A stretch of DNA of 64,000 bases from assembly GCF_000143415.4 (NCBI RefSeq), contig NW_003314308.1, forward strand, positions 682,001 to 746,000. The letters are read 5' to 3'. Made by a program: the position numbers and the translations under genes. This DNA comes from Selaginella moellendorffii (taxonomy: Eukaryota > Plantae > Lycopodiophyta). Of the stretch, positions 18,901 to 64,000 are shown in pieces (the first letter of the stretch is position 1; every line of letters starts with the position of its first letter). A model generated the notes under the pieces. That model did no database searches, was not told the origin of the DNA, and saw nothing but the letters and a program-made list of their open reading frames with translations.

Positions 18901-21900
18901 GCAGCATTCAGGATGGCCAGCAACATATCCTCCTGCTCACTTCGCTCGAAGCTTCCAAGTCCTTCGAAATCCAGAATAATAAACATGCAGTCCTCACTGG
19001 CCCGGCAAGTCATCCACACGCCATCCGTGCAGCGTCCACCGGCAACGTCAAGGACCGAGCCACTCAGGTGATTCAAGAGGTACGACTTTCCACTGCTCTG
19101 CTTCCCCATCGAGGAGATAACTTTCACAGGCCCCGTCCAGCTTTCGAGAAGAGCATCGTAAACGCTGAACTGAATGATGCCTGCAAGCTGGATAGCGTCT
19201 CCATAGCTCACGTCTGCTGCCATCTCCAGTCCATCGATCAGAGGCCTCAAGTTGTTGTTTTGAGCTCGAGCGATCTGCACCGGAACGAGAGACATCAACT
19301 GACGCAGAAACTCGCTCATGTTCCTGTCCTCTGGCTGCACCAGCATTCCTGAGTCGCTGAAGAACTGCAGATCGAAGAGGATCCTCAGGCCCGAGAAATC
19401 CTTGCCCTTGTCCTTCTCCAGCTGCTGGACGATTCTTTCCGCATGGCTGGTGAGCTTTCTTCTTGCTAACATCGGGTCGCCTCTCAAGACGTCTACCACC
19501 AAAGAAAACCGGAGAATCCTCGAAGAATTAATGAGCGGAGGACTCACTGCATATTTGTCGAAGACATGGTAGATGTAGTCGAGCTCGTGACACATCGATT
19601 CCTCACTTTCTGCTGGTGCCACTTCTGCCTTGGTAAAAGAGTCCCTGACGAGCTGACAGCTTTGGGAGGACACCGTTACTTTCAGACACAGCGACCGCAC
19701 CACATTCATATCCTCTCCATCACTGATTAGCATCTGCATCTGCGTCCCAAAATTCGCCACTGCAAGCTGGAAGTTACTCCCATTCTTGACTGCTACTCCC
19801 AAGTCCACTGCTTTCATGCGTTCCAAACCGTCATCGAGTCTGTAAATTTCAGCTGAAAGTGCCGCTCCAACTTCCGACGGGCCACCACACACTGCGACCA
19901 GGCAGAGGCCATCCGCTGTCAAGCAAGGCCTCAGGAACGAAGTTGGAAGCTGGATGACTCGCGGCTTCATCATTCCTGGTTGTACCGCTTCAAAAACCCG
20001 GACACAGAAGTCCTCGTCCGCCACTAAGAGCTCCTCTCTGCCGGGTATGAACTCCATCCAGGTGATGTTCCTGCTGCCACTGTAGTTGCTGAGTAGAATC
20101 GTGACCCCGTTCCACATCAGCTCGCGGAACGACTCGTCAAACCGGTATACTTTGATCATTGCTCCCGAGACGTCGTATAGAGCGATGAACCTCAAGACCT
20201 CGTCATAAGCAACAAGATCCACGCCCCTGCTAAAAGTCTTGACGCGCATCTTTGAGCTTGGAACGCTCAAGTGTGCTCCCAAACTCGGGCATAAGTATAT
20301 GCTCAGCTGCGAATTCTGGAGTCCTCTGACGAAAACGAGCACCTGTCCAGACTTCAGGAAGACGACTTTAGACAGTCCAAACTCGCTAGCTTCCAAGTCC
20401 ACCACGTCACACCTTTGAGAGCACTTGAGGGTGATAAAGTGCTCGCGGTTTTGCATCTGAACTTCCAGATCTTTCTTTGTAGGCAGCAACTCGACAGCTT
20501 TCCAGGAGACACGCTCATTTTGAGTGATTTCTCTTCTGAAACGAATCTGGACCCGGTCGCTGTAAGCCTCTGAAACGCAAGTGTCCAACAAGACTTTCGG
20601 ACGTGTGTCGTTGGGATCCCACAGTTTCGCTCGAAACTCTGCTACGCATTCGGACTTCTTGGACTTGATAGCTTGCTTCAGTTGCTCCCGTTTCTCCGTC
20701 AACTCAGAAGTGGCCGTTGACTTCAAAAAGCCAAAGAGAACTTCCTCGGAGCCTTCAAAGATACTGCTGAAGAACTTCATCCGACCAGTTCTGTAGACCT
20801 CAGCACACCAAGGAAGTATCTTGTCTTCTGCCTCCAAAACAAATGGTCCAGCTGAAGCCCGTATTTCTTGCCACCTTTCCTCGCATAACCTCGCATTGGA
20901 CGCATACTGGAACTGGTTCTTATCCGCAAGCACGCAATGGAAAAGAACCTCGTCATCTGCTTCTTCGGGAATACCCAGCATGGCTTTGTGAGAGATCACA
21001 AAGTCCGCAAGCACAACTTTCCCCTCCAGAGCCACCACCTCCTTGGCGAACGAATCTATCCATGAGTGAATCCCGGAATCGACCTTGGTGAAGCCAACAT
21101 CGTAGATTGTCGACCCTCTCCAGTTTAATATCCCAACTATGACGGCCAGCGTAAATCTGTCGTTCGTGAACACTGGACCGGTTCTGCGACTAGAAGAAAG
21201 TTTGAAGGTGGCAGTGGAGTTTTTCTCATTAACCGCAGAAAGCATGTCACCATACCGCACCGGACCTGACTTTCTCGTATCAGCGGACAGAATGGTGTAG
21301 GAGCCACCAAAAATGTCAAAGGTAACTCTCGAGCCGATGAACACGATTGAACCTCTGTGACTGTTGAGCACGCTGGCCAGCCTCGACTCCAAAGTCTCCA
21401 CAGCCTTGGTGTCCAAATCTCGAGTCGACTTGCCTGGCTTATCACAGTATTCCAGAAACTCTAGAATACTTGCACCACTCAGCTGACATGGTGAAACTTC
21501 CCCATGGACTTTCGAGTAGGCCATCTCCTCCCAGGGAAAATGGAGCCTCAGGTAAGCCTTCAACCCCTCGGCCAAAGTTTGTAGCACAGATATCTTCCTC
21601 ACGGTTAGGTAGTCTTCCGTGTTGGAGAGTTTTCTGGACTCCACGTCCATGGATCTATCGAGCGCACGGAGACTGTCGGACAAAGTGTCAAAACCATTCA
21701 GCTTCGCTGCGTTTGCAAAGAGAAGAAAGCCGATTTCGCTCAGCTTACTGAGGTCGAGGCAGAGATCTTTCCACTCCGCCATCTTTTCAGGCACGTATGA
21801 TCGAGAAACTGTCCATTCTCCAGACACAAGCTTCGTTTCCGGAGTGTACTTCTCGGGAACAAGCAACGCGCAGCGATGAAAGCCTTCACTCCACATTGAA

Positions 21901-22643
21901 CAGTATCCAGACGCCACAGGTGGGAGACCTTTCAGGCGCAGCTCAAAGCCTGGTAGCACCCCAAAGTCATTCTCCGACGAGTTCACGACCGATATCTGCA
22001 GCCTCTGGATCCGATTCTTTTTCGCCGCCACCCTCACCACTGAAGAAACATTCGCACCGCCATCTTCAACTTCCATGCAGCAGTAGACCGCGTCGCAAAG
22101 GTCCAAGAGGTAGCGTATGAAGTTGCAAGAGATGTCACCCCGTCGTGCAGCCGAGAACTTCTTATCCGGATGCCAGTAGAAGAGCACAAGCTTCTTCTCC
22201 TCGAACAGAGCTCCGTAAAGTCCAGGCAGAAGGGAGTCCTCTCGAAGCTGTGTCACCGTCTCTTCCGGAAGTTGGCCGTGCTGCAGTAGAACTTTGGCCA
22301 GAATGCGTTTGCTCCCGTAGAGCCCCACCGTGGCTAGAACGGAGCTGTCCAGCCGAGAGAGATCCAAGATCCAGCGGCCGCTAGATGTTGACTTAACCGA
22401 GCCTGGCGCCACAGCGTTGAAGAAGGCAAAGATGTCCTCTCGATTGATTAGCACCTTTTCGACGAAGCTCAAGTCTTGCTTGTCCGACTTTACCCCGATC
22501 AAGTTGAAAAGAGCGTTCGCTGGAGGTGATACCTGGACGACTTCCATCGGATCGCCAAGAACAGGAGGTATTTCATTGTCGACGTAGTCGCGCTCAGGAT
22601 TCGCGTCCACCACCTCGAAATCGTCAGCCGCGCCTCCTCCCAT
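15954..22643 (-). CDS. ~2190-aa protein: long N-terminal region, very-large/GBP-atlastin-superfamily GTPase domain, Cys/His-rich (NF-X1-like) repeats and C-terminal vWA domain
   Basis: Exons 22643-18870, 18810-16767 and 16708-15954 total 6573 nt in frame; introns are 59 and 58 nt GT-AG. G1 GKQSSGKS, G2 RCTDGVW, G3 LDFEGLGS, putative G4 IKD. vWA MIDAS DRSGS...GGT...LSDG. Confidence 0.88.
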
Positions 22644-30475: not shown

Positions 30476-33400
30476 CTAGTATTTGCCCAGCCAATGCTGG
30501 GCAAAGCCTCTCAAACTCACAAATATCTTTGTGACCGAATTTGCTCACATTTCACAATTTCCTTGTGAGATGATTCCTCCATCTTTAGCACTGGTCCATT
30601 GCTATCCATTGGGCCATAGAGAAAGTTAAAACATAAACAAAGTTTATTATAATTTGTTTTTATGTTTTAAGGTGTAGTAGGACAGGAGTTAGTTAATATA
30701 AAGCTTCTTTATATACAATATTGATGGTGAATATTGATGAATTGAATGGAATTAAGCAACCTTGTGTGAGTTGTGTCAATTTGAATTGCAAGTTGTTGTG
30801 GTGATGTGCATCTTGAGAGTGCAACATAAAGCTGCCCATGGCATAATCCAATTATTGGAGACATATTTCTCAGAAGAATAATTATACAACCTTCTTTTAG
30901 TATTAATTTATGTGGTGGTAGTCCAGAGGGAGTAATAGAGTTTAGAAATTCAATTGGGAAATCTTCAAGGTGTTCAACATCAACAAAGTCAATGCTAATA
31001 TAAATTTGAGGTGGACCTGGTAATTGAGAGATGATGTTGTTGTTAATTGGAAATGTATCATCATTGAGAGGTGTTAAAATGGCTCTATTTGCTGCAATTT
31101 GAACATTTGAAATGTCTTCGATACATGGGAATACGAAATTAGTAATAAAGGTACTTTTAATTAGTTCTAAAGGAAAAAGGATAAAATCAAGTGGTAAAAT
31201 AGGGTTTTGTGTGTAATTATTTCCATCACTAACTTTCAATAGCTATTCTGCCCAGTTTGGGAACTTGGGGCCAAGTTGCATATTTGTTTGCAATTAGAAC
31301 TTTCTAAATAGATTTCATAGACTATTCATTCTTATAGATGTGGAAACAATTTATGCTTAATGACTGTGTGGGACAATTGGTAATGTTTGACAGAAGTCAC
31401 CACTTATAACAATAACAATGCCATCGAATGGAGAATTGTTTCATTTCAAGTTTCGTAAGTAGCGGTCAATAGCTGAAAAGGCAAGTGTATGAACCATATT
31501 AATTTCATCCCAAATAAGCACTTGTATTGCTTTCATAAATCTGCTGGCACTATTATTAGGTGTTAAACCAGAAACAGATGTATCATTAATTAGAATTGGT
31601 AACTTAAAGGTTGCATGGGACATTTGTCCATTGTGTAGTAATATGCAATGCCATACAAACCATTTTTTTATTGTAGAACTCAAAATACTTTACCATTGTA
31701 CTTAATAAATATGTTTTGTCAATACCGCTAGGGCTATCAATAAAATAAAATGGTTGGTATTGGTCGGGCACTTGACAATGGTAACAATTTAATTAAATAT
31801 AGCTAATTGTTCAACATTCAAGTTTCTAATATGATGGTAAATTTTTATATATAAATGGTTGTAGTTTAATATTGGTTGAATAAAGGTATTTAGGATTGGG
31901 ATAGGTAAGTTGTATAATTGATTTGTTTTACCATGTATTTTCATTCTTGACTTAATGTCTATTAGAGCAAGTTTATATTGGCATACAATATTTATTCTCC
32001 CAAAATCTTCAGAGAGCTGATCCTTAAAAATATCCCAAAGATATAATGGGTCTTGTGAATTGCAAAAAATATATATGAAAGTAAAAAGTTGACGCAATTG
32101 TGTAGGCATTTGAAAATTGCATGATTCTTGTAAACAGTTACCACTCATTATCATCATCAAGAAGACCCATAGCAATAGCAGCTTGTTAAAAGCTTTAGTA
32201 AGCTATATCATTAACTATTTTAATATTGTCGAAGGATGTCGCACCTCTTTTATGAAGAAGAATATTACATAAGTGGTACAACTCGATATTTAGAGGAGAT
32301 ACTGAGTATAGTCGAGGAATAACCTTTTTTTTTCTCAACATTGCCATACATTAGCAGATTTATTGAAAACATAATGTAAAGGTATTTTAACAAAGGTATA
32401 TTGTCTTGCATTCGGATAATGAATAATGAGTTCGAACCATTTTGTTAACATTGTTCTATTATGTGCTGCTCTTTGCAAGGCATTGTGCTCTAAGCCTTCT
32501 GTAAAAAATACATATTTTAGAAGTCAGGAAGATGTACGGGTAGACGTATTATAGGGTGTGAACGTTCATGTATTTTAAATCTAAATATCCTCCAAATAAC
32601 TTCCGATGCTGAAATGTATCGGGTATTTATAAAATTTGTGATTTCATCACAATTTAATACGTTTCCAGATTGAGTAGCTGTTTGGATTTCAATGGTTGCA
32701 CAATCATATCCTTTATAAATATATTGAAAAAGATACTTAATACTTTTATTTGATGCACATATTTCTACATTTATATGGGCTTTGTATTTTTTACATAAAT
32801 ATTTATTATATAGGACAATCCATCTGTTATCAATTGGAACATCATTTTTAAGGAAGGTATTGTTTGGCTTAAAATATTCTGGGTACCCATCGACACAATA
32901 TGTAGTTCCGTCATTGAAGTTTTTGGGATAGTTTTTGGAGCATTTTTTGTTTTCCATACATGGACTTTGAGGATTTAGTAATCCACATGGACTATGTATC
33001 ATATGTGATGTGATTATTTCAAATAATTCGGGTTTTGATAAAAGGTCAAGTAATTGAGCAAATACATATTGGTCAATAGTGTCACGGTCTTTAATTTTAC
33101 TTTCATTGTATAATATGCCTAGAAAATGACAATGTGGCAAACCTTTTTTTTGGAACTCAATGACACATATAAATGCAATAGATCTTCCAAAGATATTATT
33201 TTGTGTAATATCATGAAGAAAATATTTTAGCTTCATGTTAAAAACCCTAGCAACTAAATCAGGTCGGTGTTCAGGTCCTTCATTAGGGTGCAAATTTTGT
33301 AATATTTGAAGCCATTTAAGGTTGCAAATGAAAGTTATGAAAATATCAGGTTTTGAGTATTTTGTTACAATTGCCATAGCATCTTGGTAATTTTGTTGCA

Positions 33401-35482
33401 TAGCTTTTGGGCTTCTTGTAAAAGTAAAAGGTAAAATAACAATTTTTCCTGATTGAGCATTTGCATTAGTAGCTTTGCCAACAACATAATCCATTAAACT
33501 TGTATAAAAATCAACTCTTATATTTTTTTGATTAGATCTATAGTATTGTAAATTGTTGCTTTTAATTTTAACATAGGCATCTATAATATATTGTTGGGTG
33601 AGTTTTCCAATATGTAAAATTTGGTCATATGTAACTGTAGAGGTTGATAATGTTGAATCTCTTTTGGACAAACGATATGTATAATATTGAAAGAGTGTTA
33701 CATGCTTGTTAGAAGAAAGCTTGTCATGCCAAGCTCTATCTCCATGTGGAAAAAGCAATGGATAAACCATAAGATCACAATTAGCATTTAAAATAGATAT
33801 ATGTTGTGGTTTTGATGATTTTGGATGAATGCATATTTCACAGTCAAAAGGTGGCATACCATCTTCACTTTGGAAAACTATTGCAACATCATTAGTTTGT
33901 GGAGTATTATATCGACGATGGTCTGTGCCTTCATTTTTAATGAGCATATATACTCCACGTAAATTGCTACCATAAATAATAGTTCTTGAAATATTTTCTC
34001 ATTCCAATTCATACATCATTCTAAAAGCTTGTGCATATGGATTAATATGTCAAAGTATCATATCTAGTTGAAGCAGTAAATTATAATCACAGTTAATGTT
34101 AAAAGGGTTTTGTTTTCTAATATCAGTAGCCTCATTGGAATCTAGCATGTACAATTGACTGTAACTTGGATTTTGATGTATTGAAGGATGTTATGGCATA
34201 ATTTTGTGATAGATTTGTCCATGAATTCTATAGCAGTATGGACCATGACCCGTAAAAGTATCAATGCTAGCTCCCATAGATGCGAAAGCAACACTATTAC
34301 ATTGTCTTATATTACTCTTGAAATTAGAGTGTTTGTGTGAGTTATATACAGAATACAGAAAAGGTATTGGAGGCAGGTAGACCTATCCACTCTAGTAACA
34401 AATAAACTTGTTCTCATTGGCAAAGTGTGAGGCATGACAATACTTACAAATATATGATAGGGGACCTATATTCATTGTCAAAACAGATGTATCATTATAT
34501 AGGTAATTGCTAGCAAGTGTGCTGCAAATCTGAGGTGAACAGGGCAAATAGGAATTCGAAATTGACTGCTGTTTAATGTGATTATTAAGATTTGTTTGAT
34601 GTCGATACTCTATAGCCTCTTGATATTACTGTTGTAAAAGCTATATGTATGTTTGTGCTAGTTAGTGTCTTAAACGTTATAATGAAGTGATAATGCTTTG
34701 CTTACTGCGTGAGTTTGTGCTCCCTGTCCCATCGCAACACTATTGTGTGTGTTGTGTGGGTGAGTGATGGAACGATGTACCACTTGCTCGTCGCGTGCTC
34801 TGGAGCCGACCATCTGCTGCTCACTTTACAATTACGTGCATTCCCTGGAAGAATAGACTCGTCAGTAAAAACCATGGTATGTTTGGGTAAGCTTACCACT
34901 GTTGTCTTGTTGGGATCATCTATAGCTTTCCTCGGGTCGTCAACACTTTTGTACGTGATGAAAGCGAATCCCCTGCTGGATCAAAAATAGGAATTCCTGT
35001 GCCTCACGTCCACACCTCCAGGCTCTGCAACGCTGCTCGCCATCCATTCCAGCAAAATCCCTGGCCGCTGCTTCCCTGTCGATGCCTCCGGCCACGCCAT
35101 TGCAGCTGCTCGTCGCCAAAATCCTGCTCGGACGATTTGGGCTCCTTCTGCTGGAAAAGGGATGCCGAGCGATCCCCTGTCCTTGGTTGCTGCTGGGCAG
35201 CAGTGCCCCCTCTCTCGCTTCCCCTGGAAACCCCGTGGCTGGGAGGAGCCGTGGTGAAAAAAAGAGAGCGTTACCAGGCAAGCAGACGGGTGTCGCTCAC
35301 ACCTCCTCCCCTGGCCGGGGCCATGCCGCGTGCCCACTGGCCAGCCCATAACCTCACAAAAATATTTCAAAAGGACGTGTGGTAAGAAACTGATATTTAC
35401 CAGTTTACCCCACATCCGACGGCCCCGATTGGCCAGATCCGGCGGCCCACAAAGTTCGGCGTTTGCTCCTTATAGTAGTAGA
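30476..35482 (-). mobile_element. Helitron, about 5.0 kb, both termini visible, decayed Rep/helicase
   Basis: Minus strand starts A|TCTACTACTATAAG at 35482 and ends with hairpin GCCCAGC-ATTG-GCTGGGC then CTAG|T at 30476. AT target site, no TSD. Confidence 0.9.
30709..34500 (-). pseudogene. Helitron RepHel (HUH endonuclease + PIF1 helicase), with stops and frameshifts
   Basis: PDIFITFICN, VIEFQKKGLPHCHFL (HUH), YLFQYIYKGYD, VLIWDEINMVH, LPPHKLILKEG..LLRN and HGQLYVALSR in broken ORFs. Confidence 0.92.
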
Positions 35483-50783: not shown

Positions 50784-52549
50784 CTTGAAATTTTGTAAAT
50801 CCCATTGTTATCCACCCTCACCCACACCAAAAAGAAGAAACTCTAAGCATGCAACTATACCGGTGTTATTGCAAATCATAGCCTCTAAAGAAATAGAGCT
50901 AAGATGAAGATTAAAATGTTGACATAAAAAACTTTCAGAAACAATACTCTGAGAGAATGAAAGAGGTGGATGATCTTGAAAATGAAGAAGAAACCTCTCC
51001 ATCCTTCTCAATAGGTTTTGGAATTCTCTCTCTTTATACTACTTGTAAAAATCCATAGTGAAAAATAATTGAAATTTAAATAGTAAGAAGAGTGTCAACA
51101 ATATATAAAATGAATTTAAATTCTATAGCAAATTTAACATGTGCAAGTGTGACAGTATTAATATTACTGTCATTTATTATGATGTCTGATCCATGTATAC
51201 ACATAGAACCAAGGAATGTAGCACATGTGGGTTTTACCCTTTATCCTATGGTGATTTACAATAGATAACCACGAAGAGGAACCTAAACCCTCCATGTGCC
51301 ACATGCCACATGCCACATCTCCAAAGGACAATGGAGTGGAACTTGAGTTTCAGTGCCTTGAGCCACTGAACGAAGGAATGGAGCTAAACTTTTAAGCATA
51401 GAGCCAAGGAGTGATAGAACCGGACCACAGAGTGACTCTTGAGCGTTTAGCCCAAGGAGCGAAAGGACAGAAGCATGGAGCAACTTGGAACAATCTTAAA
51501 GTATTCAACATCCTAATGCCAGGACAAGCATGCAAAAAAAAGCCAAATAGATGTAAGCAACTAATTTTTTCCATTCTACTTTAATCACTTAACTGCACCT
51601 CCGACCACTTAGAGGAGTCTCATTCACAACCTCCATAAGTCCCTCTCAAGACTTGAGGTTTGCTAGCCCCGAGAATGGCATCTATGCCACTCAACCTTTG
51701 CACTTGGTCTAAGTGCTCCACGTGTCTGGTCCCATGACCGACACCCCAAGGCACCACTAACATACCAGACCGTTACGCTAGGCCATGCCTAATCACCTTG
51801 GTCACATCGGTGGTCCAACATCATCTGCATTGCAATCCCGTCTCTCCAAAACTGGGCCATCCGTCCATGAGTGGTCATCCCAGATCCACTTCTTAGCATC
51901 CTTAGGATGCCCACAGACATGGGAAATAGCCTTCCCCAATATCTCTTTTCTAGTCCCCACCAAGTCCCTCTCTGTCCTTGGCCATGTTTGCCAACACTGC
52001 CACTGGATCAAGGCCCACAGGCCCGACCACTAAGTCCCACGGTCCTCTAGGACTTCCTCACTGCACGACTGTATCCTTGGTCACTACACTAGAGGATTAC
52101 TCCTCTTCCTTTCCACAGTCTAGGCTTTTGGGACAACATTTCGGAACACCGTGGCCTTACACAAGCCTCATGGGTACTCTCCCTGCCTTCCGCCTTTGGG
52201 TGCTCTAGCCATAGGCTTAGAGTGAGGTTCTGTTGAGCCATGCCTGGTATCCAAGTAGGTAGTGCCACCCACACTTGGACTAGGAGCATCGGCCAGTCGA
52301 TCTCCCGGGGGACCTAGAGCCGGCTCTTGAACACTTCACCAAGCTACCCCGTTTGTCGGTCTGTGTTCACTCTAGTCTTGGACTTCCCAGTGGGCAGCTC
52401 ATCACCTAACACTGGGTACAGCCTTCCTGGGCCAAACTAGCCTTTCCTGGCCAAATTGGCTCCACTGTAGTCCTTCCCCTTACTATACTTTTGGAGCTCA
52501 CCAAACCCCCCAGGGTCTGGGAGACGAACGCTTTGGGCTTTCACCCTCT

Positions 52550-52830
52550 TAGACTCGAACTCAGACTTGGACTCGGACTCGGACTCGGACTCGGGCTTGG
52601 TCTCAGTCTCGGTCCTGATCCCGATCTCGGTCTCAGTCTCGGTCTCGGTCTCGGTCCTGGTCTCGGTCTTGGTCTCGGTCTCGGTCTCGACCTCAGACTC
52701 CATCTTGGTCCATCTTGCACTCCATCTTGGGTCCATCTCGGACCCCATCTCGGACTCCATCTCGAACTCCATCTTGGATCCATCTCGGACTCCATCTTGG
52801 ACTCCGTCTTGGTCCATCTCGGACTCATCC
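52550..52830. repeat. Hexamer/dodecamer minisatellite (GACTCG / GTCTCG / CTCCATCTYGGA)
   Basis: Visible tandem units; a related tract lies at 53830-54100, and both are preceded by tactatacttttgga...gctttgggctttcacc. Confidence 0.9.
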
Positions 52831-53085: not shown

Positions 53086-54175
53086 TGTAAGCCAAAAAAA
53101 TTTCCTTTCCAATTTGCTAGTTTACCTCGTCTATCCGACCACCATGACCTTGGCCTTTGCTAAATTCCTTTGCCAAAGTTTCCACATATTGTACCAGCTC
53201 TTACTTGGTCCTACTTGGATTTAGCAACTCACTGCACGAGCAACAAAGTGCTGGCCATTCTTCCACGGATTCCCAAATCTCTCCCAATCCCCCTCCCTGG
53301 GTTAGACTGGACTTAAGGCTTGGCTACACTCCCTGTAGGCACAAGAAACCAAGCACACTAAGCCTCCAGGTTCCTAACATTCCTTACTACAACAAGGCTT
53401 GATCATGAGACCCTCCAAATCCCAAGCTTTAGGTGCAACACTTGCCTCGGGACGCCGGGGGAAAACACCATGGCCTAACGATCAGGTATGGGTACCTCTA
53501 CCCCCCTAGGAAGGGCGAGGACCAATGAGTCGTAAAGTACTCAAGTGGGGCACCACTCCATATGAGCCAGGGGCACCACAGTCGGTTTCCCTTCCGGGAG
53601 TGGGAGTTGCTTTTGAGCACTTCCTGGGGTGGCCCCTCCGACACCACCCAAGTCCATGCTCACTCCCACCTAAGGCCCTTCAACCCCAGTTTCAACCTCA
53701 AGTCAATTTGAAAGCATCACTAGAGAGTTCCTTCAAGAATGGTTCCTAGACCTCACTATCCCTACTATACTTTTGGAACCCCCTGCAGGCCCCCCCTCCG
53801 GGAGATGCATGCTTTGGGCTTTCACCTCTAGACTTGTATTAGTACTTGGACTCGGTCTCAGACTCGACTTCGGACTCGGTCTTGGACTCGATCTTGGACT
53901 CGACCTCGAACCCGATCTCGGACCCGACCTCAGACTTGACCTCGGACTCGGTCTCAGACCCGATCTCAGATCTCGGACTCTGTCTCAAACTCAGTCTCCA
54001 ACTCGGTCTCGAAGTCAGCCTCGGACTCGATCCCGGACTTTGTCTTGAACTCGGTCTCAGAGTTGGTCTTGGACTCGATCTCAGACTCAGTCCCATCCGA
54101 TGAACTCTTTATCATTTTGGTTATGCTTTCATGGATCCTTTAGCCTACAACACTTCGGGGAGTTGGTTCCTTACA
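53086..54175 (-). mobile_element. Putative LTR (about 1.09 kb) of the Gypsy remnant, containing a GACTCG minisatellite
   Basis: Minus strand TGTAAG...CTTACA, preceded by purine-rich GGGGTGGTGGAGT (PPT-like) and followed by TGGTATG (weak PBS-like). Confidence 0.5.
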
Positions 54176-57860: not shown

Positions 57861-58605
57861 AAAAATGCCTCCTTACCCTTATGAGGCAAGGGTTTTATAC
57901 AAGGAAGATGGGGAATATTCTAAGGACCAGAATATTCCCTCTCTCTCTCTCACTCTCTCAATGGCCACGCCCTAACATGCAACCATGGTGGATCGTGTTG
58001 GCTCCAAACGTGCGAGAACCCTCCGAAAAGTGTAAAGTGTACCACTGCTACTGATGCTAAGTGCTGGTAACTACGTGGAATAGTAGAAACTCTAAAAAAC
58101 AAAGTGGAAAAAGAAAGAAAAGGGGTAGGTCTGAAGTTTGAAGATAGGGAGGAAAACCCAGTGAAGCTCTATTTCGTTAAAGTGGGAATTGTCATTATCC
58201 CACTTGTAAAATAAGGTTTCCAAACCTTTATATAGTATATAAATATAACAAAATTCAACTGCATTGAGGCACATGCCATTTTATTTTAAACAAGGAAATG
58301 TCTACTCAATCACTTCTCCTCCCCCTGCCACTGCTTCACCTCTCTCTTTTCCTTGTCATCGTCGTCCAATTTCTTTCCATCCTTTTAATATTGGCTCAGT
58401 TGCTCCGAGTCTAGGTGGAGCCCAAGTCCCCATTCAATCTTTACTTTCCCCTTATTAATAAAACAACTTCGTAGACTTCCAATAACATGCTATAACACTT
58501 CTAGTATAATGCAAATCCTCTCAAAGAATTGTCTTTTAATATTAATACAATGGCATGGAACCCCATGCCATAATAAGTTACATTTTTAAATAAATACATG
58601 CCATC

Positions 58606-59468
58606 TCAGACTGTTATTTTTTGCCTCCAACGCCTATACAATAATTTTGGAATTTCATCACTCTCCACACTATCAGGATTTAAACCCAATAGTAATGCCA
58701 TCTCTTCTCTAATACGTCCACGCTCATGTTCAGTGGTTGAAGAACCCATCCGGTTGAGCAGATTATGGAGATGCGGATAGTGCTTGGCTAGACAATATAC
58801 ATGCCATAAATGATGACTGGTGTCTGTCCGATCAAATGGCTTCTGATATACCGTTCCATCTGCCATTTGGTTGATTTCTGCAGCCACCTCCTGGACTGGC
58901 CGGTTCTCTATCACCATCGCTCCAAGCCGTTTTGCAAGGTCCCCCAGAACATATGGTTTCTTCTCCCTAGTTTCCATACTGCAAGAGATGGGGTGCACTG
59001 CATATGTGTGCGTGTTCGCTGCAGTTTTAATCGGCGAGTCATCGATGATGAGGATTTCACTTGACCTAGCAGTTCGGTTCATCACTACAGCCTCTGGCTT
59101 GACGAAGATGGGCTTGCTACCCCTCACATGGACCATAGTCAAGCAATCCTCCTGCGTTAGGAGAAAGTCAAATGGTAATATTATTCGCGTCTGATCGTGC
59201 ATCATCTGTAGCAACGTTAGTGCATTGTGGCGCATCATGGATGTCCAAACTCCCAATTGCAAATTGAACCCGGCCCTCTGTTTTAAGTGTCGCATAGTCA
59301 TTATTAGACCCTGCAGTTTCTCCCGTGTGATTAATGTGAATCTGTCTCTTTTGACCAACTTGCGACCGCAAGCTTTGGAGGGTGCAGTGACATTCGAGGA
59401 CGAGCCACGCTCATGGGAGAAAAGGACACCGTTCAGATCAAAAACGATACAGTACTTTCGCCGTGACT
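58606..59468 (-). CDS. FCP1/NIF-like HAD phosphatase domain exon (probable last exon of the upstream ParB-MTase-like gene)
   Basis: CIVFDLNGVL (motif I variant), LGVWTSMMRHN, FLLTQEDC, KPIFVK, ILIIDDSPIK..N..A.HP. Acceptor ttcag at 59469-59473. Confidence 0.8.
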
Positions 59469-59515
59469 CTGAAATGAAATGCGTCAGCATAAAAAATGGT
59501 ACAAGTCAATTTTAC

Positions 59516-61861
59516 CATCTACAATATTAGGGAATGGTGCTCCCGATGGTCGTTGAGAGGGTTTTGGTCAAGGAAACGTGAAGGGCGGAAATACTCTCCT
59601 CTGCAATGTGGGGTCAATCGCATCCGATGGCGTGTGGGCACATGCCATTTCAGCTGTACACTCTGGTACAACTGACTCAACAGTGGCATGGGGTGGTTCC
59701 GATGGCGTGTGATCACACGCCATTTCAACTGGTGCCTCCGTTGGCAAAGTGGACATGACCGAACAGGCAACAGGGGCAGTGTAGGGAGGTTCCAACAGCG
59801 CGTAGTCAGACGATTGGGCACACGTTGAGTCCGTTGGAAATGAGGATACGACCGGCTCGGCGGCTGGGGCGGCCTCATGCGGGTCCAATAGCGCCTGGTC
59901 ACCGTCAGTTGGATACGTGGACAAGATTGACTCAGTGGTATGGGCAGCATCAAGTGGAGCGTGGTCAGCTTGCTTGGCGTTGATATAGATAATAGCCTCC
60001 ACCAGCTCTGATGACTCTTGCAGGCAAGTAGAGTCCACTGGCGGATCCATATGCATGTCCAAATATCTCCCTTCGATTGAGATGGTATCCTCCCTACTGG
60101 CTACTAAAAACAAACTCATTAGCACATTGAATCGACTATACTGTATTTACCATCAACTGCTATTGAGGAACTAGGACCGATATCACTTGGGCGCACTGCT
60201 GATTCTGAAGGATTGGACATACGTTTCGACCCTTGCTTGGCACTATCCTTCCTCGACACTAAAGGCTAGAGTTTGTATCTTAATTCAACTGAATAATCTC
60301 TACTTACCATTTGCTCTGCGACCTACATGGACAATGTTAGAAATGGTAAAAGGTTAGGAATGGATGTACTATTATTTACCTGATGGTTTGTCTTGTATGA
60401 CCTTCCTCCGCTGCTCTTTGGCCACCTTAGGCTGGCCATCGTCGTCATCATCATCATCATCGTCATCCTCACCCGACTGTCTTAACATGGTTTCTGCACG
60501 TTCTTGCACCCTTCAAAGACGACGAGATGAGAAAAACGTGGCCCTGACTTGAAAAGCATCCCTCATCCATTGTACCTCTCCATTGAGATTGGGGAAGGGG
60601 AGTCCGCCATAGGAATCTGAGTCAGGAGGTGGTGACTGGCTGCTTTCACTCAGCCCTTGATCTGCAATGAATGGCATGAGCACACACGCCATAACCGCGA
60701 GGCATTATTTATCATCTTTTCGTTGCCCTTCTTCCTTTTCGAATCAAACGCCTCTGATCCCGATGACTGTCCAACGTGCTTTCGCTTTTTATGACCACTG
60801 TCAGTTTGAGCTTGATCTGCAAGAAATGGCATGAGGACCCACGCAATAACCATGACGCTTTACTTCCCATCCTTGGAGGCTCTGTCGTGCCTTCCGCATC
60901 CTCAGGTGCCTGCTCCTCAATTCCCTTTCGCTTTTGTTTCTTATGCGCCCGTTCTACAGAAATAGCATGAGGACATACGCAATAAGCACACAAATGCTTT
61001 TACCCTTCCTCCTCTACCCTGGTCGGTTGTCCATCTCTTTGTCTACAGCGTCTGAAAGCTGTTTTGCAGGTAGCCTAATTCGAGGTTCACGACGTCTCCT
61101 TGGCACTTGAACTGTATATTATTGCATCAACACATGCAACATCCCATAATATTTTTAAGTTACCTTTCATAAAGTTTTCCATTGGTTCAACTCATTCCCC
61201 TGAAATACAAACTTAGATAAGTGCATAGGGCCATATGTCATGATCGTACCTGTTTCGGAACTCTCCTTATCACTCTCCGAGGCCTCCCCCTCCTCCACTG
61301 AAGGCACGTTGTTCTGTTCGATTTTCTCGACGCGATCTGCAAGAACATTAGTTAATTGCGTGGGGCCACACGCCATCAAACCTTCAGGTTCTTGTCGTGA
61401 GGTCTGCGCTGCTTGCCCTAGTCTCTTTGGAATTTGAGCTGCAAGAAGCAATGGCATGAGAATTCACGTATAACAAAAATGATTGGTACCTCTCGTCCAT
61501 TGTACTTGGCTGGTGCTTGCCTGTTTTGCCTTTGAAGAAGTGTCTCCTACAAGGAATGGCATGAGACCACACACCATTGCAAATATAATTTGTACCTCCT
61601 TTTTTCCTATTGCTTGTCTGTTTGTCCTTCTTTGACGCGCCACCAGTGTGCTTTTCAGTCCTCGTGTCTGAATATTCACAACGATCTATAATCAAAATGG
61701 CGTGAAGCCTCACGTGACCTTACCTTGTGCAGGTTGTGAGCTCGGCCCAACATGGGTATCTTCAACAGTAGCTGTTAACGCCGTTTCAACATCTGGGGGT
61801 GGCCACGCTCCTGCATATAGAGCTTGTGAAATAACATTTAAACTTAAAGTGCGTACTCACC
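59516..61861 (-). pseudogene. Chain of short phase-1 exons encoding a Lys/Arg/acidic low-complexity linker, with several nonsense codons
   Basis: Regular GT..AG introns of about 45-60 nt. Most exons checked are symmetric phase 1-1 and read in one frame apart from TGA/TAG at 61192, 61014, 60513 and 59568. Confidence 0.6.
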
Positions 61862-61879
61862 AGATTCGTAGAGAAGATA

Positions 61880-64000
61880 CTATTTTTCTTTGGCAACTGT
61901 AATTATATGCTCCATTAAAGTCACCTCTTCAATGGAGTTTGTCACTGCAACACACGGGACACCCTTGAGTAGTGCGGCTCGAAAGAATAGTCCGCCGCAG
62001 TTGTACTCGACAACGCATTTGCCCTTGGAGTCGGAAGCAGGTGACCCACCCGCTATTGCATTGAAGACCCAGCAGAGCATTTCCCATGCTGCACCTGGAG
62101 CTTTCTCTGGATTCGAAAGCTCCATAGCCGTCTTCAGTTCCTCAGGCACGGGTAAATTGACCTCCCTCAGATCAATTCGATCGGCCTTGTCGAACGAAGC
62201 TGGGAAGTCACTCCAGTCCCACTCTGCTGCAAGACCAATAACAAGGGCGAGTGTGAAGATGCGGACATTCGTCGGTATCTTCTTCTTAGCCATTATCCCA
62301 TGGATCTCCTGCATCTCCTTGCCTTTCAACCGAGCCTTCACCTCGTTCAAGGCCTTCCAGAACTTGTGATAGGATTCGGAGTCGTAGATCATATAGTGGA
62401 CTGAAGATTCCACCTCCACAAGTCCCACCATTAAGTCAATGATGGAGCTGACTTCGTCTGCATGAGTGATCTCCTCGTTTGTGAAGTCCATCACACAAAA
62501 GATGTTCTTGACCTGCTCATCTCCGCGGGAAACGATGCTCCTCCACCTTTGATCCTCATCCGAATTCATGTATACCCGGTAAGGTTCTCGATAGGCCTCT
62601 GCTACGGGGTCGAGCTGTTTCTGAAGCCGGCAGTCGACATCCCTCTTAATGAAATTTGGATACTGATCCAACTTCTCAGCTTTACTTTTCGTGGCATCCC
62701 GCAGCAGATAGATGAACTTGGGGGCCCCCTTCACGTAGTCGTCGATGTCTTCATTTGACAACTCCAGCTCTTCCATCATCTCTTGCGTGGTGTCGATGCT
62801 CACCCTCTCCACGGCCACTTGCTCGAAGATCCAATCCTTCAATAGCGCACGAGCTCTCAGAGTCGTGCACAAGTCCTCGTATGTCACAATATGGCCGGGA
62901 GTCATTTTGGTCTTGTTGAAGACTACCTCACCACGTAGAAGAGCATTAGCCACTGTCAGAAGGTCGTCGTCGTCTAAAGACTGCGAGAAACGCAAGGCGT
63001 TGAGCTTCAAATCATTGGGCTTCCGGCCGTCCTCCACACCCATTGAGTTTAGCAACTCCCCGTCATGGTACCTCCTCAGCACATCTACCCATTTGTCAAA
63101 AACAACTTTTGTCGCGAGTAGAATGTTATAGATGCTGAGTGTGTCATTGACCCCCAGTGTTTTCGAGAGAAGACTCGAGAATTCCTGCAATGGAAATGGC
63201 GTGAGGCCACATGCTATGCCACATGCAACGAGGCTTACCTGCCAGGCGCTAGTTGCTAGTGCACGTCCTTGTCCTGGTTTTTGTGGCTTCTTCAGTTGAA
63301 CCCAGAGCTTCCGTGTTCGTGCCAATGTCTTGTGCAGACCCAATTTGTAGCACGTTTCTTGCTTGACATTCTGCGCGTGGGAGATGGATATGATAGATCG
63401 GAGGGGCGAGTTGCCTTTTATCAAGCGGACAACTCTTGTCTTGAAGACTTTCTTCACCTCCTCGCCCACCATAATATCCAGAACTATCTCTTGCATCGCT
63501 AAGCTAGAATGCTGCCTGGAGACGGCATAGAACCGGATGTTCTGATCGTCCAACACCTTCCTATTGATCAAGTCTGGAAACCTCGTCTCGCCCTTCATTG
63601 TTCGGTAGTAGGGGATCACGTCTGTGATGTCGGGTGTTACTGGACTTGCCAGCATCTTCTGCTTCAGTTTCTCCACCCACTCATCAGATACTAGCCTGTG
63701 GTTGTATTTGCTTTGGATGTCGATACGGCTCACGTCGATTGTATATACTTTGTTGGAATAGTAACAAGTACTATTATCTGTGACGATTTTTGCTGCCTCT
63801 TCTTGCTCTTTCTGCTCTTTGCGGCTCTTCTTTTTGGTGGGTGTAGTGTTCGAACCCGAGGCAATGGCATCACCGAGTAGCTTCTTTTTTGGAGCAAGAG
63901 AGTCGAACGTCGGCTTGAGCTTGACCACCCTTTTCTGCTTCGGGGTAGTTTCCAGATCGACCCCCTTCCCCTTCGCTTCGCGAACTGGAGGCACTCTCAA
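61880..64000 (-). CDS. ParB/Srx-like plus degenerate methyltransferase-like protein (5' end outside the window)
   Basis: Open for 706 codons including an in-frame 54-nt intron (63185-63238). YTIDVSRI..YNHRLVSDEWVEKLKQKM..FYAVSRQHSSLA (ParB-like); KCVVEYNCGGLFFRAALLKGVPCVAV (SAM-motif-I-like). Confidence 0.65.
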   Translation of the reverse strand: MRVPPVREAKGKGVDLETTPKQKRVVKLKPTFDSLAPKKKLLGDAIASGSNTTPTKKKSRKEQKEQEEAAKIVTDNSTCYYSNKVYTIDVSRIDIQSKYNHRLVSDEWVEKLKQKMLASPVTPDITDVIPYYRTMKGETRFPDLINRKVLDDQNIRFYAVSRQHSSLAMQEIVLDIMVGEEVKKVFKTRVVRLIKGNSPLRSIISISHAQNVKQETCYKLGLHKTLARTRKLWVQLKKPQKPGQGRALATSAWQVSLVACGIACGLTPFPLQEFSSLLSKTLGVNDTLSIYNILLATKVVFDKWVDVLRRYHDGELLNSMGVEDGRKPNDLKLNALRFSQSLDDDDLLTVANALLRGEVVFNKTKMTPGHIVTYEDLCTTLRARALLKDWIFEQVAVERVSIDTTQEMMEELELSNEDIDDYVKGAPKFIYLLRDATKSKAEKLDQYPNFIKRDVDCRLQKQLDPVAEAYREPYRVYMNSDEDQRWRSIVSRGDEQVKNIFCVMDFTNEEITHADEVSSIIDLMVGLVEVESSVHYMIYDSESYHKFWKALNEVKARLKGKEMQEIHGIMAKKKIPTNVRIFTLALVIGLAAEWDWSDFPASFDKADRIDLREVNLPVPEELKTAMELSNPEKAPGAAWEMLCWVFNAIAGGSPASDSKGKCVVEYNCGGLFFRAALLKGVPCVAVTNSIEEVTLMEHIITVAKEK

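What the first reader, a model, noticed from the sequence alone, without database searches (positions are those of the whole stretch)
58606..64000. Giant spliced ParB-like / DNA methyltransferase-like / FCP1-phosphatase fusion gene hidden across many ORFs
Seen: the 706-codon ORF has a ParB/Srx-like N-terminal block and a C-terminal VVEYNCGG..RAAL..G..CVAV block. Six codons after its TAG (61880) comes a phase-1 donor (G|GTGAGT, 61860). The following short exons, where I translated them, join in one frame (GAWPPPDVE.., DTRTEKH.., GDTSSKAK.., AQIPKR.., DRVEKIE..) and finally splice (59515/59469) in frame into ESRRKYCIVFDLNGVL, an FCP1-like HAD domain. The five stops found are all TAG or TGA, one C-to-T step from CAG/CGA. 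Known: ParB fused to beta-class N4C/N6A MTases is a phage/plasmid architecture, and FCP1/SCP enzymes dephosphorylate the Pol II CTD. Inference: a eukaryotised, probably transposon-borne chromatin or anti-silencing factor coupling DNA loading, DNA-modification reading or writing, and CTD dephosphorylation, recently inactivated in this copy.
Basis: partly seen in the sequence, partly recalled or inferred. Interest (0 to 1): 0.88.

Follow-up and report, generated by a model that had tools for sequence, protein, structure and literature searches.

The report
Broken ParB/methylase-like–phosphatase-like composite gene
In a repeat-rich stretch of the spikemoss Selaginella moellendorffii, a 17-exon reading frame joins a phage-derived, apparently inactive DNA-methylase-like protein to a phosphatase-like domain; it carries four premature stops and an unusual set of 22-bp palindromes, and resembles helper genes of giant algal transposons.

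Summary
On the minus strand, 16 short introns join 64000-58606 into one frame of 1,520 codons. It has four internal stops (TAG 61880, TGA 61192, TAG 61014, TGA 59568) and one dead splice donor (AT at 60708). The spliced linker has 3 stops in 544 codons; shuffled sequence averages 25.

The window is Selaginella moellendorffii scaffold GL377612.1.

Domain calls are partly supported:
- **Methylase-like C-terminus:** it descends from beta-class N6/N4 DNA methylases (profile-profile probability 95.7%; best PDB hit M.RsrI). The catalytic DPPY motif is gone and the SAM loop is altered.
- **ParB-like N-terminus:** only weakly supported (one PHROG hit at E 1.3e-3; profile-profile P 0.027; structure models unusable).
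- **Last exon:** it passes Pfam NIF/SCP, but motif I reads DxNxV, not DxDxT.

The single-protein fusion is not established. The only paralogue ends in TAG within three codons of the same position and has no linker or phosphatase domain. Yet the first linker exons have no start codon of their own.

New here: a 22-bp palindrome (ATGGCRTG-N6-CAYGCCAT), about 11 copies, all inside this locus and mostly in its introns. ParB-like plus methylase accessory proteins, with inverted-repeat arrays, are already described in giant algal transposons. I read this as a decaying land-plant variant of that kind.

The parts
63239..64000 (-). Exon 1, in-window part only; the ORF runs off the window end. After a basic low-complexity stretch it holds the putative ParB/DGQHR-like domain (residues about 80-254). 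ORF706 reads SRQHS where homologues read DGQHT, SGQHS or NGQHT.
   Evidence: alignment with P0005, P0007, L002, L006. PHROG 1033 'ParB-like partition protein', E 1.3e-3, for the L002 homologue only; hhalign P 0.027. No Pfam or PDB hit.
63185..63238 (-). In-frame 54-nt GT-AG intron inside the 706-codon ORF. Its position (after W-Q) is conserved. It contains one copy of the palindrome (63196-63217).
   Evidence: GTAAGC...TTGCAG. An intron lies at the same site in L002, L006 and paralogue L001. The paralogue's intron has no palindrome.
61880..63184 (-). Exon 2. It holds a helical middle region (the best-modelled part), then a degenerate beta-class N6/N4 methylase-like domain. The motif IV strand keeps Asp but reads DFTN instead of DPPY. 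Motif I reads EYNCGG instead of DPFxGSG. It ends at TAG 61882-61880.
   Evidence: AlphaFold pLDDT is 70-89 only for residues about 290-440. Paralogue P0001 ends in TAG within 3 codons of this stop.
61861..61879 (-). Nineteen bases (six codons plus one base, no ATG) between the TAG and the phase-1 donor GTGAGT at 61860.
59516..61810 (-). Linker of 14 exons: 61810-61724, 61685-61596, 61546-61490, 61438-61382, 61336-61250, 61199-61164, 61111-61004, 60953-60864, 60816-60709, 60661-60576, 60476-60380, 60322-60308, 60258-60151, 60103-59516. They are separated by introns of 38-99 nt and nearly all junctions are phase 1. The sequence is K/E/S/D/P-rich low complexity with KKRK-type basic runs and a poly-Asp run. 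There is no Met before residue 828 of the chain.
   Evidence: No Pfam hits for pieces.
61192..61194 (-). In-frame TGA in exon 61199-61164.
61014..61016 (-). In-frame TAG in exon 61111-61004.
60707..60708 (-). Dead splice donor: AT where the neighbouring duplicated unit (60863) has GT.
   Evidence: repeat D3, 77 nt, 75% identity, spacing 155.
59568..59570 (-). In-frame TGA near the end of the 588-nt exon, 18 codons before the last donor.
58606..59468 (-). Last exon: NIF/SCP-type HAD domain plus a C-terminal extension of about 130 residues. Motif I is FDLNGVL (DxNxV); WTS, VKP and IIDDSP follow at the positions I expect for HAD motifs II-IV. An ATG inside the preceding intron (59490) gives the free-standing 294-codon ORF.
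   Evidence: PF03031, E 1.3e-5, 25.4 bits, cut-off 21.8; the only homologue found, P0022, is a stand-alone 215-aa gene with FDMNGVL.
58550..63217 (.). Span holding the palindrome family ATGGCRTG-N6-CAYGCCAT. Copies: 58550-58571 (after the stop), 59627-59648 and 59702-59723 (in the large exon), 60671-60692, 60826-60847, 60962-60983, 61355-61376, about 61450-61471 (weak), 61556-61577, 61697-61718, 63196-63217 (in introns). Decayed copies lie in introns 61249 and 61163. In introns the 3' arm ends 8-18 nt before the acceptor.
   Evidence: 4 exact matches, 0 expected, all in the locus; of 17 loose matches in the window, 12 lie at 58258-63217, 10 of them in this family.. Absent from L001-L004.

Best explanation
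This is one decaying transcription unit in a repeat-rich part of the Selaginella moellendorffii genome. It strings together three parts.

1. A eukaryotic, intron-bearing descendant of the phage/plasmid 'ParB-like N-domain plus beta-class N6/N4 DNA methylase' architecture. Its methylase catalytic motif is lost, so it would at most bind DNA or SAM, not methylate.
2. Fourteen mini-exons of basic/acidic low-complexity linker, partly made by tandem duplication of exon-intron units.
3. An SCP/NIF-type HAD domain in which the general-acid Asp is Asn.

Shown: the exons, the frame, the breaks, the methylase ancestry, the NIF match and the palindromes. Inferred: at some time the frame was read as one protein, because the first five linker exons are open, symmetric (phase 1-1) and have no start codon of their own. 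It is now interrupted by four stops and one dead donor. Today only the first 688 spliced codons, ending at the family's normal C-terminus, and possibly the free-standing 294-codon HAD ORF could be translated.

By analogy with ParB-like and methylase accessory genes of giant algal DNA transposons, the protein most likely recognised the 22-bp palindromes scattered through its own locus. It would have acted on chromatin or transcription there. That last step is inference only.
For: - **Organism.** An exact PPR protein match places the window on GCA_000143415.2 GL377612.1.
- **Single frame.**
- **Real gene family.** The intron inside ORF706 sits at the same site in L002, L006 and L001.
- **Methylase ancestry.** Pfam PF01555 E 1.3e-3 on L006. 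M.RsrI is the top PDB hit. Weak tblastn hits on plasmids fall almost only on annotated DNA methyltransferases, at their C-termini. These were confirmed as PF01555. hhalign gives 95.7%, E 9e-9, colinear over the whole domain under greedy extension.
- **Motif loss.** Seen in the alignments.
- **NIF domain.**
- **Duplicated units and dead donor.**
- **Palindromes confined to the locus.**
- **Repeat context.** Decayed Ty3/gypsy ORFs lie directly downstream and a Helitron ORF lies in the window.
- **Mild CpG depletion.** 0.71-0.79 in the locus, 0.83-1.12 in PPR genes, 0.52 in the gypsy remnant.
- **Not annotated.** No protein in the 1.8-billion-representative library is more than 32% identical, although this genome is in the collection.
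- **Precedent.** A ParB-like plus N4/N6 methylase 1104-aa accessory protein in Ectocarpus Sola1 (PMC12477816). PAG2/PAG3 with inverted-repeat arrays in red algae (bioRxiv 10.1101/2025.02.11.637652).
Against: - The paralogue P0001 ends in TAG within three codons of ORF706's TAG and has no linker or NIF domain. The stop may therefore be ancestral rather than a recent mutation.
- Frame continuity across the TAG has a 1-in-3 chance expectation.
- All three other stops lie in the linker and none in the two domain-bearing ORFs (about P 0.04 under uniform decay; my own calculation). This fits two still-constrained separate ORFs as well.
- The ParB assignment is weak.
- No transposase, terminal repeats or further copies were seen. 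The window ends inside the gene, and no eukaryotic genome could be searched.
- No transcript evidence was available.
Confidence: 0.5

Rival explanations
1. Two neighbouring genes, not a fusion. The ParB/methylase-like gene ends naturally at TAG 61880. A separate downstream gene (linker plus HAD domain) has lost its own first exon or start and is decaying, or survives only as the 294-codon HAD ORF starting at ATG 59490.
For: - The paralogue's stop is at the same place and is the same codon.
- The HAD homologue P0022 is a stand-alone 215-aa gene among housekeeping genes.
- No other family member has a HAD domain.
- Stops cluster in the linker only.
Against: - The first five linker exons (126 codons) are open, phase-symmetric and lack any ATG. 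The exon that supplies their donor is the ORF706 exon itself, with 19 nt between TAG and GTGAGT.
- There is no room for another first exon between them.
Confidence: 0.3
2. A live giant fusion protein. The stops would be assembly or haplotype errors, would be bypassed by alternative splicing, or would be read through.
For: The frame is remarkably coherent. Both terminal ORFs are intact.
Against: - Four independent stops plus a GT-to-AT donor.
- No alternative GT-AG intron removes the TAG in frame. The candidate 62006-61880 shifts the frame, and the only phase-1 GT sites upstream are non-consensus (and reading).
- The locus is unannotated in every protein set searched.
Confidence: 0.07
3. The palindromes and intron similarity are only a by-product of tandem duplication of one exon-intron unit, with gene conversion. 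They have no binding or mobile function.
For: - Adjacent units share 77 nt across exon-intron borders (D3).
- Several exons begin with the same ATCAAG (D4).
- Differences between copies are CpG-to-TpG type, so they arose at the DNA level.
Against: - Copies also lie in the ancient conserved intron of ORF706, whose paralogue lacks it. They also lie inside an exon and after the stop codon.
- The palindrome is better kept than the surrounding exon sequence.
Confidence: 0.35

Closest known systems
ParB-like plus N4/N6 DNA-methylase accessory proteins of giant eukaryotic DNA transposons (Ectocarpus Sola1-1_Ec32, 1104 aa; red-algal Plavaka/Zisupton PAG2 and PAG3)
   Same: A prokaryote-type ParB-like N-domain together with a PF01555-type methylase region in an intron-bearing eukaryotic gene. 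The size matches the L002 homologue (about 1,100 aa over two exons). Arrays of inverted repeats lie beside or within the gene. The genomic setting is repeat-rich.
   Different: Here the host is a land plant (lycophyte) and the gene is low-copy. The methylase catalytic motif is lost. No transposase or termini are in view. A linker and a HAD domain follow in frame.
Phage/prophage ParB_N-N6_N4_Mtase fusions (for example Streptococcus phage Javan107 gp26, 418 aa)
   Same: The domain order is the same. The C-terminal HPxQKP helix, motif I and the following strand align.
   Different: The phage enzymes keep DPPY and FxGSG. Their ParB_N domains do not align convincingly with the N-domain here. The eukaryotic family has an extra helical domain of about 200 residues and introns.
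SCP/NIF small CTD-phosphatase-like HAD domains (Pfam PF03031)
   Same: Pfam match above the curated threshold. Nucleophile Asp, and residues at the expected HAD motif II-IV positions, are present (sequence).
   Different: Motif I is DxNxV, not DxDxT. This holds in both known members of this sub-family. There is no BRCT domain, so it is not FCP1 proper. An unmatched C-terminal extension of about 130 residues follows.
DndB/DGQHR-type ParB-superfamily domains
   Same: A D/S/N-G-Q-H motif followed by a helix ending in AAK, then a conserved S..N.
   Different: No NCBIfam or Pfam DndB/DGQHR hit at E up to 1. The Arg of DGQHR is Thr or Ser.

Membership tests
Beta-class N6/N4 DNA methyltransferase (Pfam PF01555) | Significant profile match to the family | tested here: inconclusive
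   ORF706 alone has no Pfam hit. Homologue L006 scores 19.2 bits, E 1.3e-3, below the 26.7-bit cut-off, at profile positions 159-216. The family profile against five genuine members gives hhalign 95.7%, E 9e-9 over 68 columns. This shows homology of the C-terminal third, not family membership.
Beta-class N6/N4 DNA methyltransferase (Pfam PF01555) | Catalytic motif IV (D/S)PP(Y/F/W) | tested here: not met
   At the colinear strand ORF706 reads DFTN. Homologues read DSAN, DANS, DATT and DLRR. Genuine enzymes read DPPY, DLPY or DPPF.
Beta-class N6/N4 DNA methyltransferase (Pfam PF01555) | SAM-binding motif I, D-x-F-x-G-S-G | tested here: not met
   ORF706 reads EYNCGG. Homologues read EYGCGG, DINTGG and DVCTGG. 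One Gly of the loop and the Ser are missing.
Beta-class N6/N4 DNA methyltransferase (Pfam PF01555) | Permuted motif order, IV before I | tested here: inconclusive
   Greedy hhalign extension is colinear from the motif IV strand to motif I, but with low per-column confidence.
ParB/Srx superfamily (ParB_N, PF02195) | Profile or fold match | tested here: inconclusive
   There is no Pfam or PDB sequence hit. PHROG 1033 gives E 1.3e-3 for L002 and 0.18 for P0005. hhalign against seven phage ParB_N domains gives P 0.027, probability 1.8%. The AlphaFold models have pLDDT of about 51 and Foldseek finds nothing.
ParB/Srx superfamily (ParB_N, PF02195) | Arg-rich nucleotide-binding box (GxRR / GERRxRA) | tested here: not met
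   The family motif is (D/S/N)GQH(T/S)xxAAK. ORF706 reads SRQHSSLAMQ. There are no paired arginines.
FCP1/SCP NIF-type HAD phosphatase (PF03031) | Pfam match above the gathering score | tested here: met
   25.4 bits against 21.8, E 1.3e-5, residues 13-161.
FCP1/SCP NIF-type HAD phosphatase (PF03031) | Motif I DxDx(T/V), with both Asp | tested here: not met
   The window reads FDLNGVL and homologue P0022 reads FDMNGVL. The second Asp is Asn in both.
FCP1/SCP NIF-type HAD phosphatase (PF03031) | BRCT domain (FCP1 proper) | tested here: not met
   No BRCT or other Pfam domain in ORF294.
Accessory gene of a giant DNA transposon | Lies between terminal repeats together with a transposase, and is multi-copy | not testable with these tools
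   The window ends inside the gene. No eukaryotic genome collection could be searched. Only one distant paralogue pair appears in the protein collections.
Accessory gene of a giant DNA transposon | Inverted-repeat array next to the ParB-like gene | tested here: met
   About 11 copies of a 22-bp palindrome, confined to 58550-63217.

The most novel reading that the evidence does not exclude
A land-plant descendant of the ParB-like/methylase transposon accessory proteins has scattered its own parS-like 22-bp palindromes through its introns, exon and 3' end. It was also fused to a CTD-phosphatase-like (possibly phospho-CTD-trapping, DxN) module. Together these would form a self-recognising device that loads on its own DNA and manipulates RNA polymerase II or chromatin there. 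If so, the palindromes would be protein-binding sites selected inside spliceosomal introns.
Probability: 0.12. Interest if true: 0.85.

Novelty: new variant of a known kind. Interest (0 to 1): 0.55.

Why it matters
ParB-like and bacterial-type methylase accessory genes have only recently been noticed in giant transposons of brown, red and green algae, and their function is unknown. A relative in a vascular plant would widen their host range. This one has a degenerate active site, a conserved ancient intron, a locus-restricted palindrome array and a possible in-frame phosphatase-like partner.

It would also show how such genes decay or are domesticated. The paralogue SELMODRAFT_409495 is an annotated gene that has lost the N-domain. 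Finally, it gives a concrete binding-site candidate to test. The palindromes lie 8-18 nt upstream of 3' splice sites in ten consecutive short introns, which is an unexplained oddity in its own right.

Tried and rejected
**Searches that led nowhere**
- Word-indexed protein searches with ORF706 and with the family alignment found nothing. Low-complexity words probably swamped the candidate list.
- The exhaustive phmmer search gave only 8 weak hits.
- The metagenome scan added one locus.
- Both AlphaFold runs (whole ORF706 with 15 sequences; N-domain with 5) gave pLDDT of about 51. Foldseek against PDB was uninformative.
- Profile searches of the whole family and of the N-domain against PDB sequences gave nothing meaningful.
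- NCBIfam gave nothing.
- tblastn of family pieces against phages was empty or noise. N-domain tblastn against plasmids was noise; the MT-A70 hit (H31) has no ParB domain.

**Readings considered and rejected**
- Fungal RIP or an introner origin was my first impression from the short introns. The window is a lycophyte, and the motif is confined to this one locus in the sequence I could see.
- An RNA hairpin selected on the transcript: mismatches are G·U on one strand in some copies and on the other strand in others. This is the CpG-decay pattern of a DNA palindrome.
- Alternative introns that would skip the TAG: all shift the frame or use non-consensus donors.
- LTRs for the adjacent gypsy remnant were not found.

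**Caveat.** The PF01555 reference set for hhalign was picked from weak tblastn hits of one family member. The 95.7% figure is therefore somewhat favoured by selection. The independent Pfam and PDB hits point the same way.
Full report
**Where this is.** A 900-residue PPR protein encoded at 13065-15764 matches exactly a gene on Selaginella moellendorffii GCA_000143415.2, scaffold GL377612.1. That places the window at about 682001-746000 of the scaffold. The window holds three intronless PPR genes, a Helitron-like ORF and a GTPase-domain ORF. Decayed Ty3/gypsy reverse-transcriptase and integrase ORFs lie at 55.8-57.9 kb, directly downstream of the finding. The gene-rich half is about 50-58% GC and the half carrying the finding is 30-50%.

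**The observation.** The 706-codon ORF (61880-64000, minus strand, running off the window) and the 294-codon ORF (58606-59490) are real. I listed candidate GT..AG introns and chose the short ones with good acceptors. This gave 16 introns: 15 GT-AG of 38-99 nt, most 45-57 nt, and one AT..AG. With these, all exons from 64000 to 58606 read in a single frame of 1,520 codons.

The internal stops are TAG 61882-61880, TGA 61194-61192, TAG 61016-61014 and TGA 59570-59568. The frame ends at TGA 58608-58606. The AT..AG intron at 60708-60662 aligns base for base with its neighbour at 60863-60817, which has GT, so that donor is mutated.

The spliced linker has 3 stops in 544 codons in this frame. The other frames have 10 and 45, the unspliced DNA has 26-45, and 1,000 shuffles average 25 with none at 3 or fewer.

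Inside the 706-codon ORF, 63238-63185 is a canonical 54-nt intron (GTAAGC...TTGCAG) that happens to be in frame. Distant homologues on metagenome contigs L002 and L006 have an intron at the same point, after W-K. So does the Selaginella paralogue. This marks ORF706 as a genuine, old eukaryotic gene family rather than a chance ORF.

**Relatives.**
- ORF706 has no Pfam, PHROG, NCBIfam or PDB sequence match of its own.
- An exhaustive phmmer search of 1.8 billion representatives gave eight weak hits and nothing above 32% identity. The locus is therefore unannotated even though this genome is in the collection.
- True relatives are a Selaginella paralogue pair (SELMODRAFT_409495 and 416075, 451 aa, covering residues 222-700), and unnamed eukaryote-like sequences from metagenomes and Logan assemblies.
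- On L002 two overlapping ORFs are colinear with all of ORF706. They give a protein of about 1,100 residues.

**Methylase-like C-terminus: supported, but catalytically degenerate.**
- Homologue L006 hits Pfam PF01555 (N6_N4_Mtase) at E 1.3e-3, below the cut-off, at profile positions 159-216 of 221.
- A profile of the family's C-terminal block has the beta-class adenine methylase M.RsrI as its best hit among 177,635 PDB sequences, at E 0.012. The aligned stretch runs from the HPTQKP helix through motif I.
- Weak tblastn hits of the L006 block on plasmids fall almost only on annotated DNA methyltransferases of unrelated bacteria, at their C-termini. Five of these are bona fide PF01555 proteins.
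- hhalign of the family against those five gives 95.7% probability, E 9e-9. Greedy extension is colinear over the whole domain.
- In that register the motif IV strand keeps its Asp, but DPPY is replaced. ORF706 reads DFTN; homologues read DSAN, DANS, DATT and DLRR.
- Motif I has lost part of its glycine loop (EYNCGG, DINTGG).
- I therefore read this as a methylase-derived pseudo-enzyme or binding module, not a writer.

**ParB-like N-terminus: plausible, not shown.** Homologues share ADxxPY, then F-x-I-x-(D/S/N)GQH(T/S)xxAAK, RKARI, S..N and ARxQW...KP..G...WKV. ORF706 has SRQHS at the key motif.
- The L002 domain hits PHROG 1033 'ParB-like partition protein' at E 1.3e-3, and P0005 at 0.18.
- Two members touch Pfam DUF6551 at 0.12.
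- I built a reference from a verified ParB_N-PF01555 fusion of Streptococcus phage Javan107 and six diverse relatives.
- hhalign against that reference gave only P 0.027, over the first strand-helix region.
- The AlphaFold models were of low confidence and Foldseek was empty.
- The paired arginines of the ParB nucleotide-binding box are absent.

**Phosphatase-like end.** ORF294 passes Pfam NIF at 25.4 bits against a cut-off of 21.8. By inspection the nucleophile Asp is present, and WTS, VKP and IIDDSP sit where I expect HAD motifs II-IV. Motif I, however, is DLNGV. The only homologue found, P0022, reads DMNGV.

In HAD phosphatases the second Asp is the general acid/base (established knowledge of the family). 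So this sub-family is either a poor phosphatase or does something else. P0022 is a stand-alone gene between MOZ/SAS, ThiF and RFC-like genes on a compact eukaryotic contig. No ORF706 relative has a HAD domain nearby.

**One gene or two?**

For one unit:
- The donor used by the first linker intron lies 19 nt after the TAG, in the ORF706 exon.
- The first five linker exons (126 codons) are open, all phase 1-1, and contain no ATG.
- The frame is continuous.

Against a true fusion:
- The paralogue ends in TAG within three codons of the same aligned position. It is followed by no donor, linker or HAD domain.
- That position is also the normal end of a PF01555 domain.
- The other three stops all lie in the linker. 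This would happen by chance about 4% of the time under uniform decay (my calculation).
- No alternative intron removes the TAG in frame.

I conclude that the locus is one decaying composite unit. Whether it ever made a single ParB/methylase/HAD protein is open. I give it roughly one chance in three or a little better.

**The palindromes.** ATGGCRTG-N6-CAYGCCAT occurs four times exactly where 0 are expected, all within the locus. With up to three mismatches, 12 of 17 window matches fall at 58258-63217, and 10 of them belong to this family. Repeat D1 adds a weaker copy near 61450, and two introns hold decayed copies.
- Eight copies sit in introns with the 3' arm 8-18 nt before the acceptor. Two lie in a 75-nt duplicated piece of the large exon. 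One follows the stop codon.
- One copy is in the ancient ORF706 intron, whose paralogue has none.
- Copy differences are CG to TG or CA. Some favour pairing on one strand and some on the other, which points to a DNA palindrome losing CpGs rather than a selected RNA hairpin.
- Tandem duplication of exon-intron units explains part of the array (D3 and D4) but not the outlying copies.

[quoted passage not shown] The Bostrychia genome paper describes PAG2 (PF01555 plus SET) and PAG3 (ParB-like plus 2OG oxygenase) in Plavaka and other elements. It reports tandem arrays of inverted repeats next to PAG3 and proposes self-binding (bioRxiv 10.1101/2025.02.11.637652). A survey of ParB-fold proteins found sulfiredoxin to be the commonest eukaryotic representative (PMC12704722). 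I found no paper linking ParB to Selaginella.

**Verdict.** This is best filed as a decaying land-plant variant of the ParB-like/methylase accessory-gene kind. Three features are new here: loss of the catalytic motifs, a possible in-frame SCP-like DxN domain, and a locus-restricted palindrome family embedded in its introns.

Noticed in passing
window 58550-63217: A 22-bp palindrome (ATGGCRTG-N6-CAYGCCAT) occurs about 11 times, only in this locus. Most copies lie 8-18 nt upstream of the 3' splice site of roughly 50-nt introns. The CTCAT/CTCAC in the 3' arm could double as the branch point.
   Followed up: partly
window 63185-63238: An in-frame 54-nt intron is hidden inside the 706-codon ORF. 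Its position is conserved in metagenomic homologues and in the Selaginella paralogue.
   Followed up: yes
L001 10001-11425 (S. moellendorffii GL377575.1): The annotated paralogue SELMODRAFT_409495 (451 aa) keeps only the tail of the N-domain plus the helical and methylase-like parts. No ParB-like region was found within 10 kb upstream. At the conserved intron site a GC-AG splice directly after W-Q would fit the family better than the annotated GT donor two codons later.
   Followed up: partly
window 16666-22643, minus strand: Two overlapping very long ORFs (721 and 1,296 aa). The second ends in a GBP/RHD3/URGCP-type GTPase domain below or near the Pfam cut-offs. The rest has no Pfam match.
   Followed up: no
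window 32517-33947, minus strand: A 476-aa ORF with Helitron_like_N (E 1.6e-51) in a 30-33% GC block. It is a Helitron Rep fragment.
   Followed up: no
window 52549-52721 and 53822-54097: Degenerate 6/12-nt repeats (TCGGAC/TCGGTC) in two blocks about 1.2 kb apart, beside the gypsy remnant. No LTR pair was detected for that element.
   Followed up: no
window 59623-59731 and 60437-60471: A 75-nt tandem duplication inside the large linker exon, each copy carrying the palindrome. A GAT/GAC run encodes ten consecutive Asp.
   Followed up: no
L003 (Logan SRR29293673 contig, 8 kb): A very compact, apparently intronless eukaryotic contig with genes about 60-160 bp apart. It carries the only homologue of the DxN HAD sub-family. 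Its organism is unknown.
   Followed up: no
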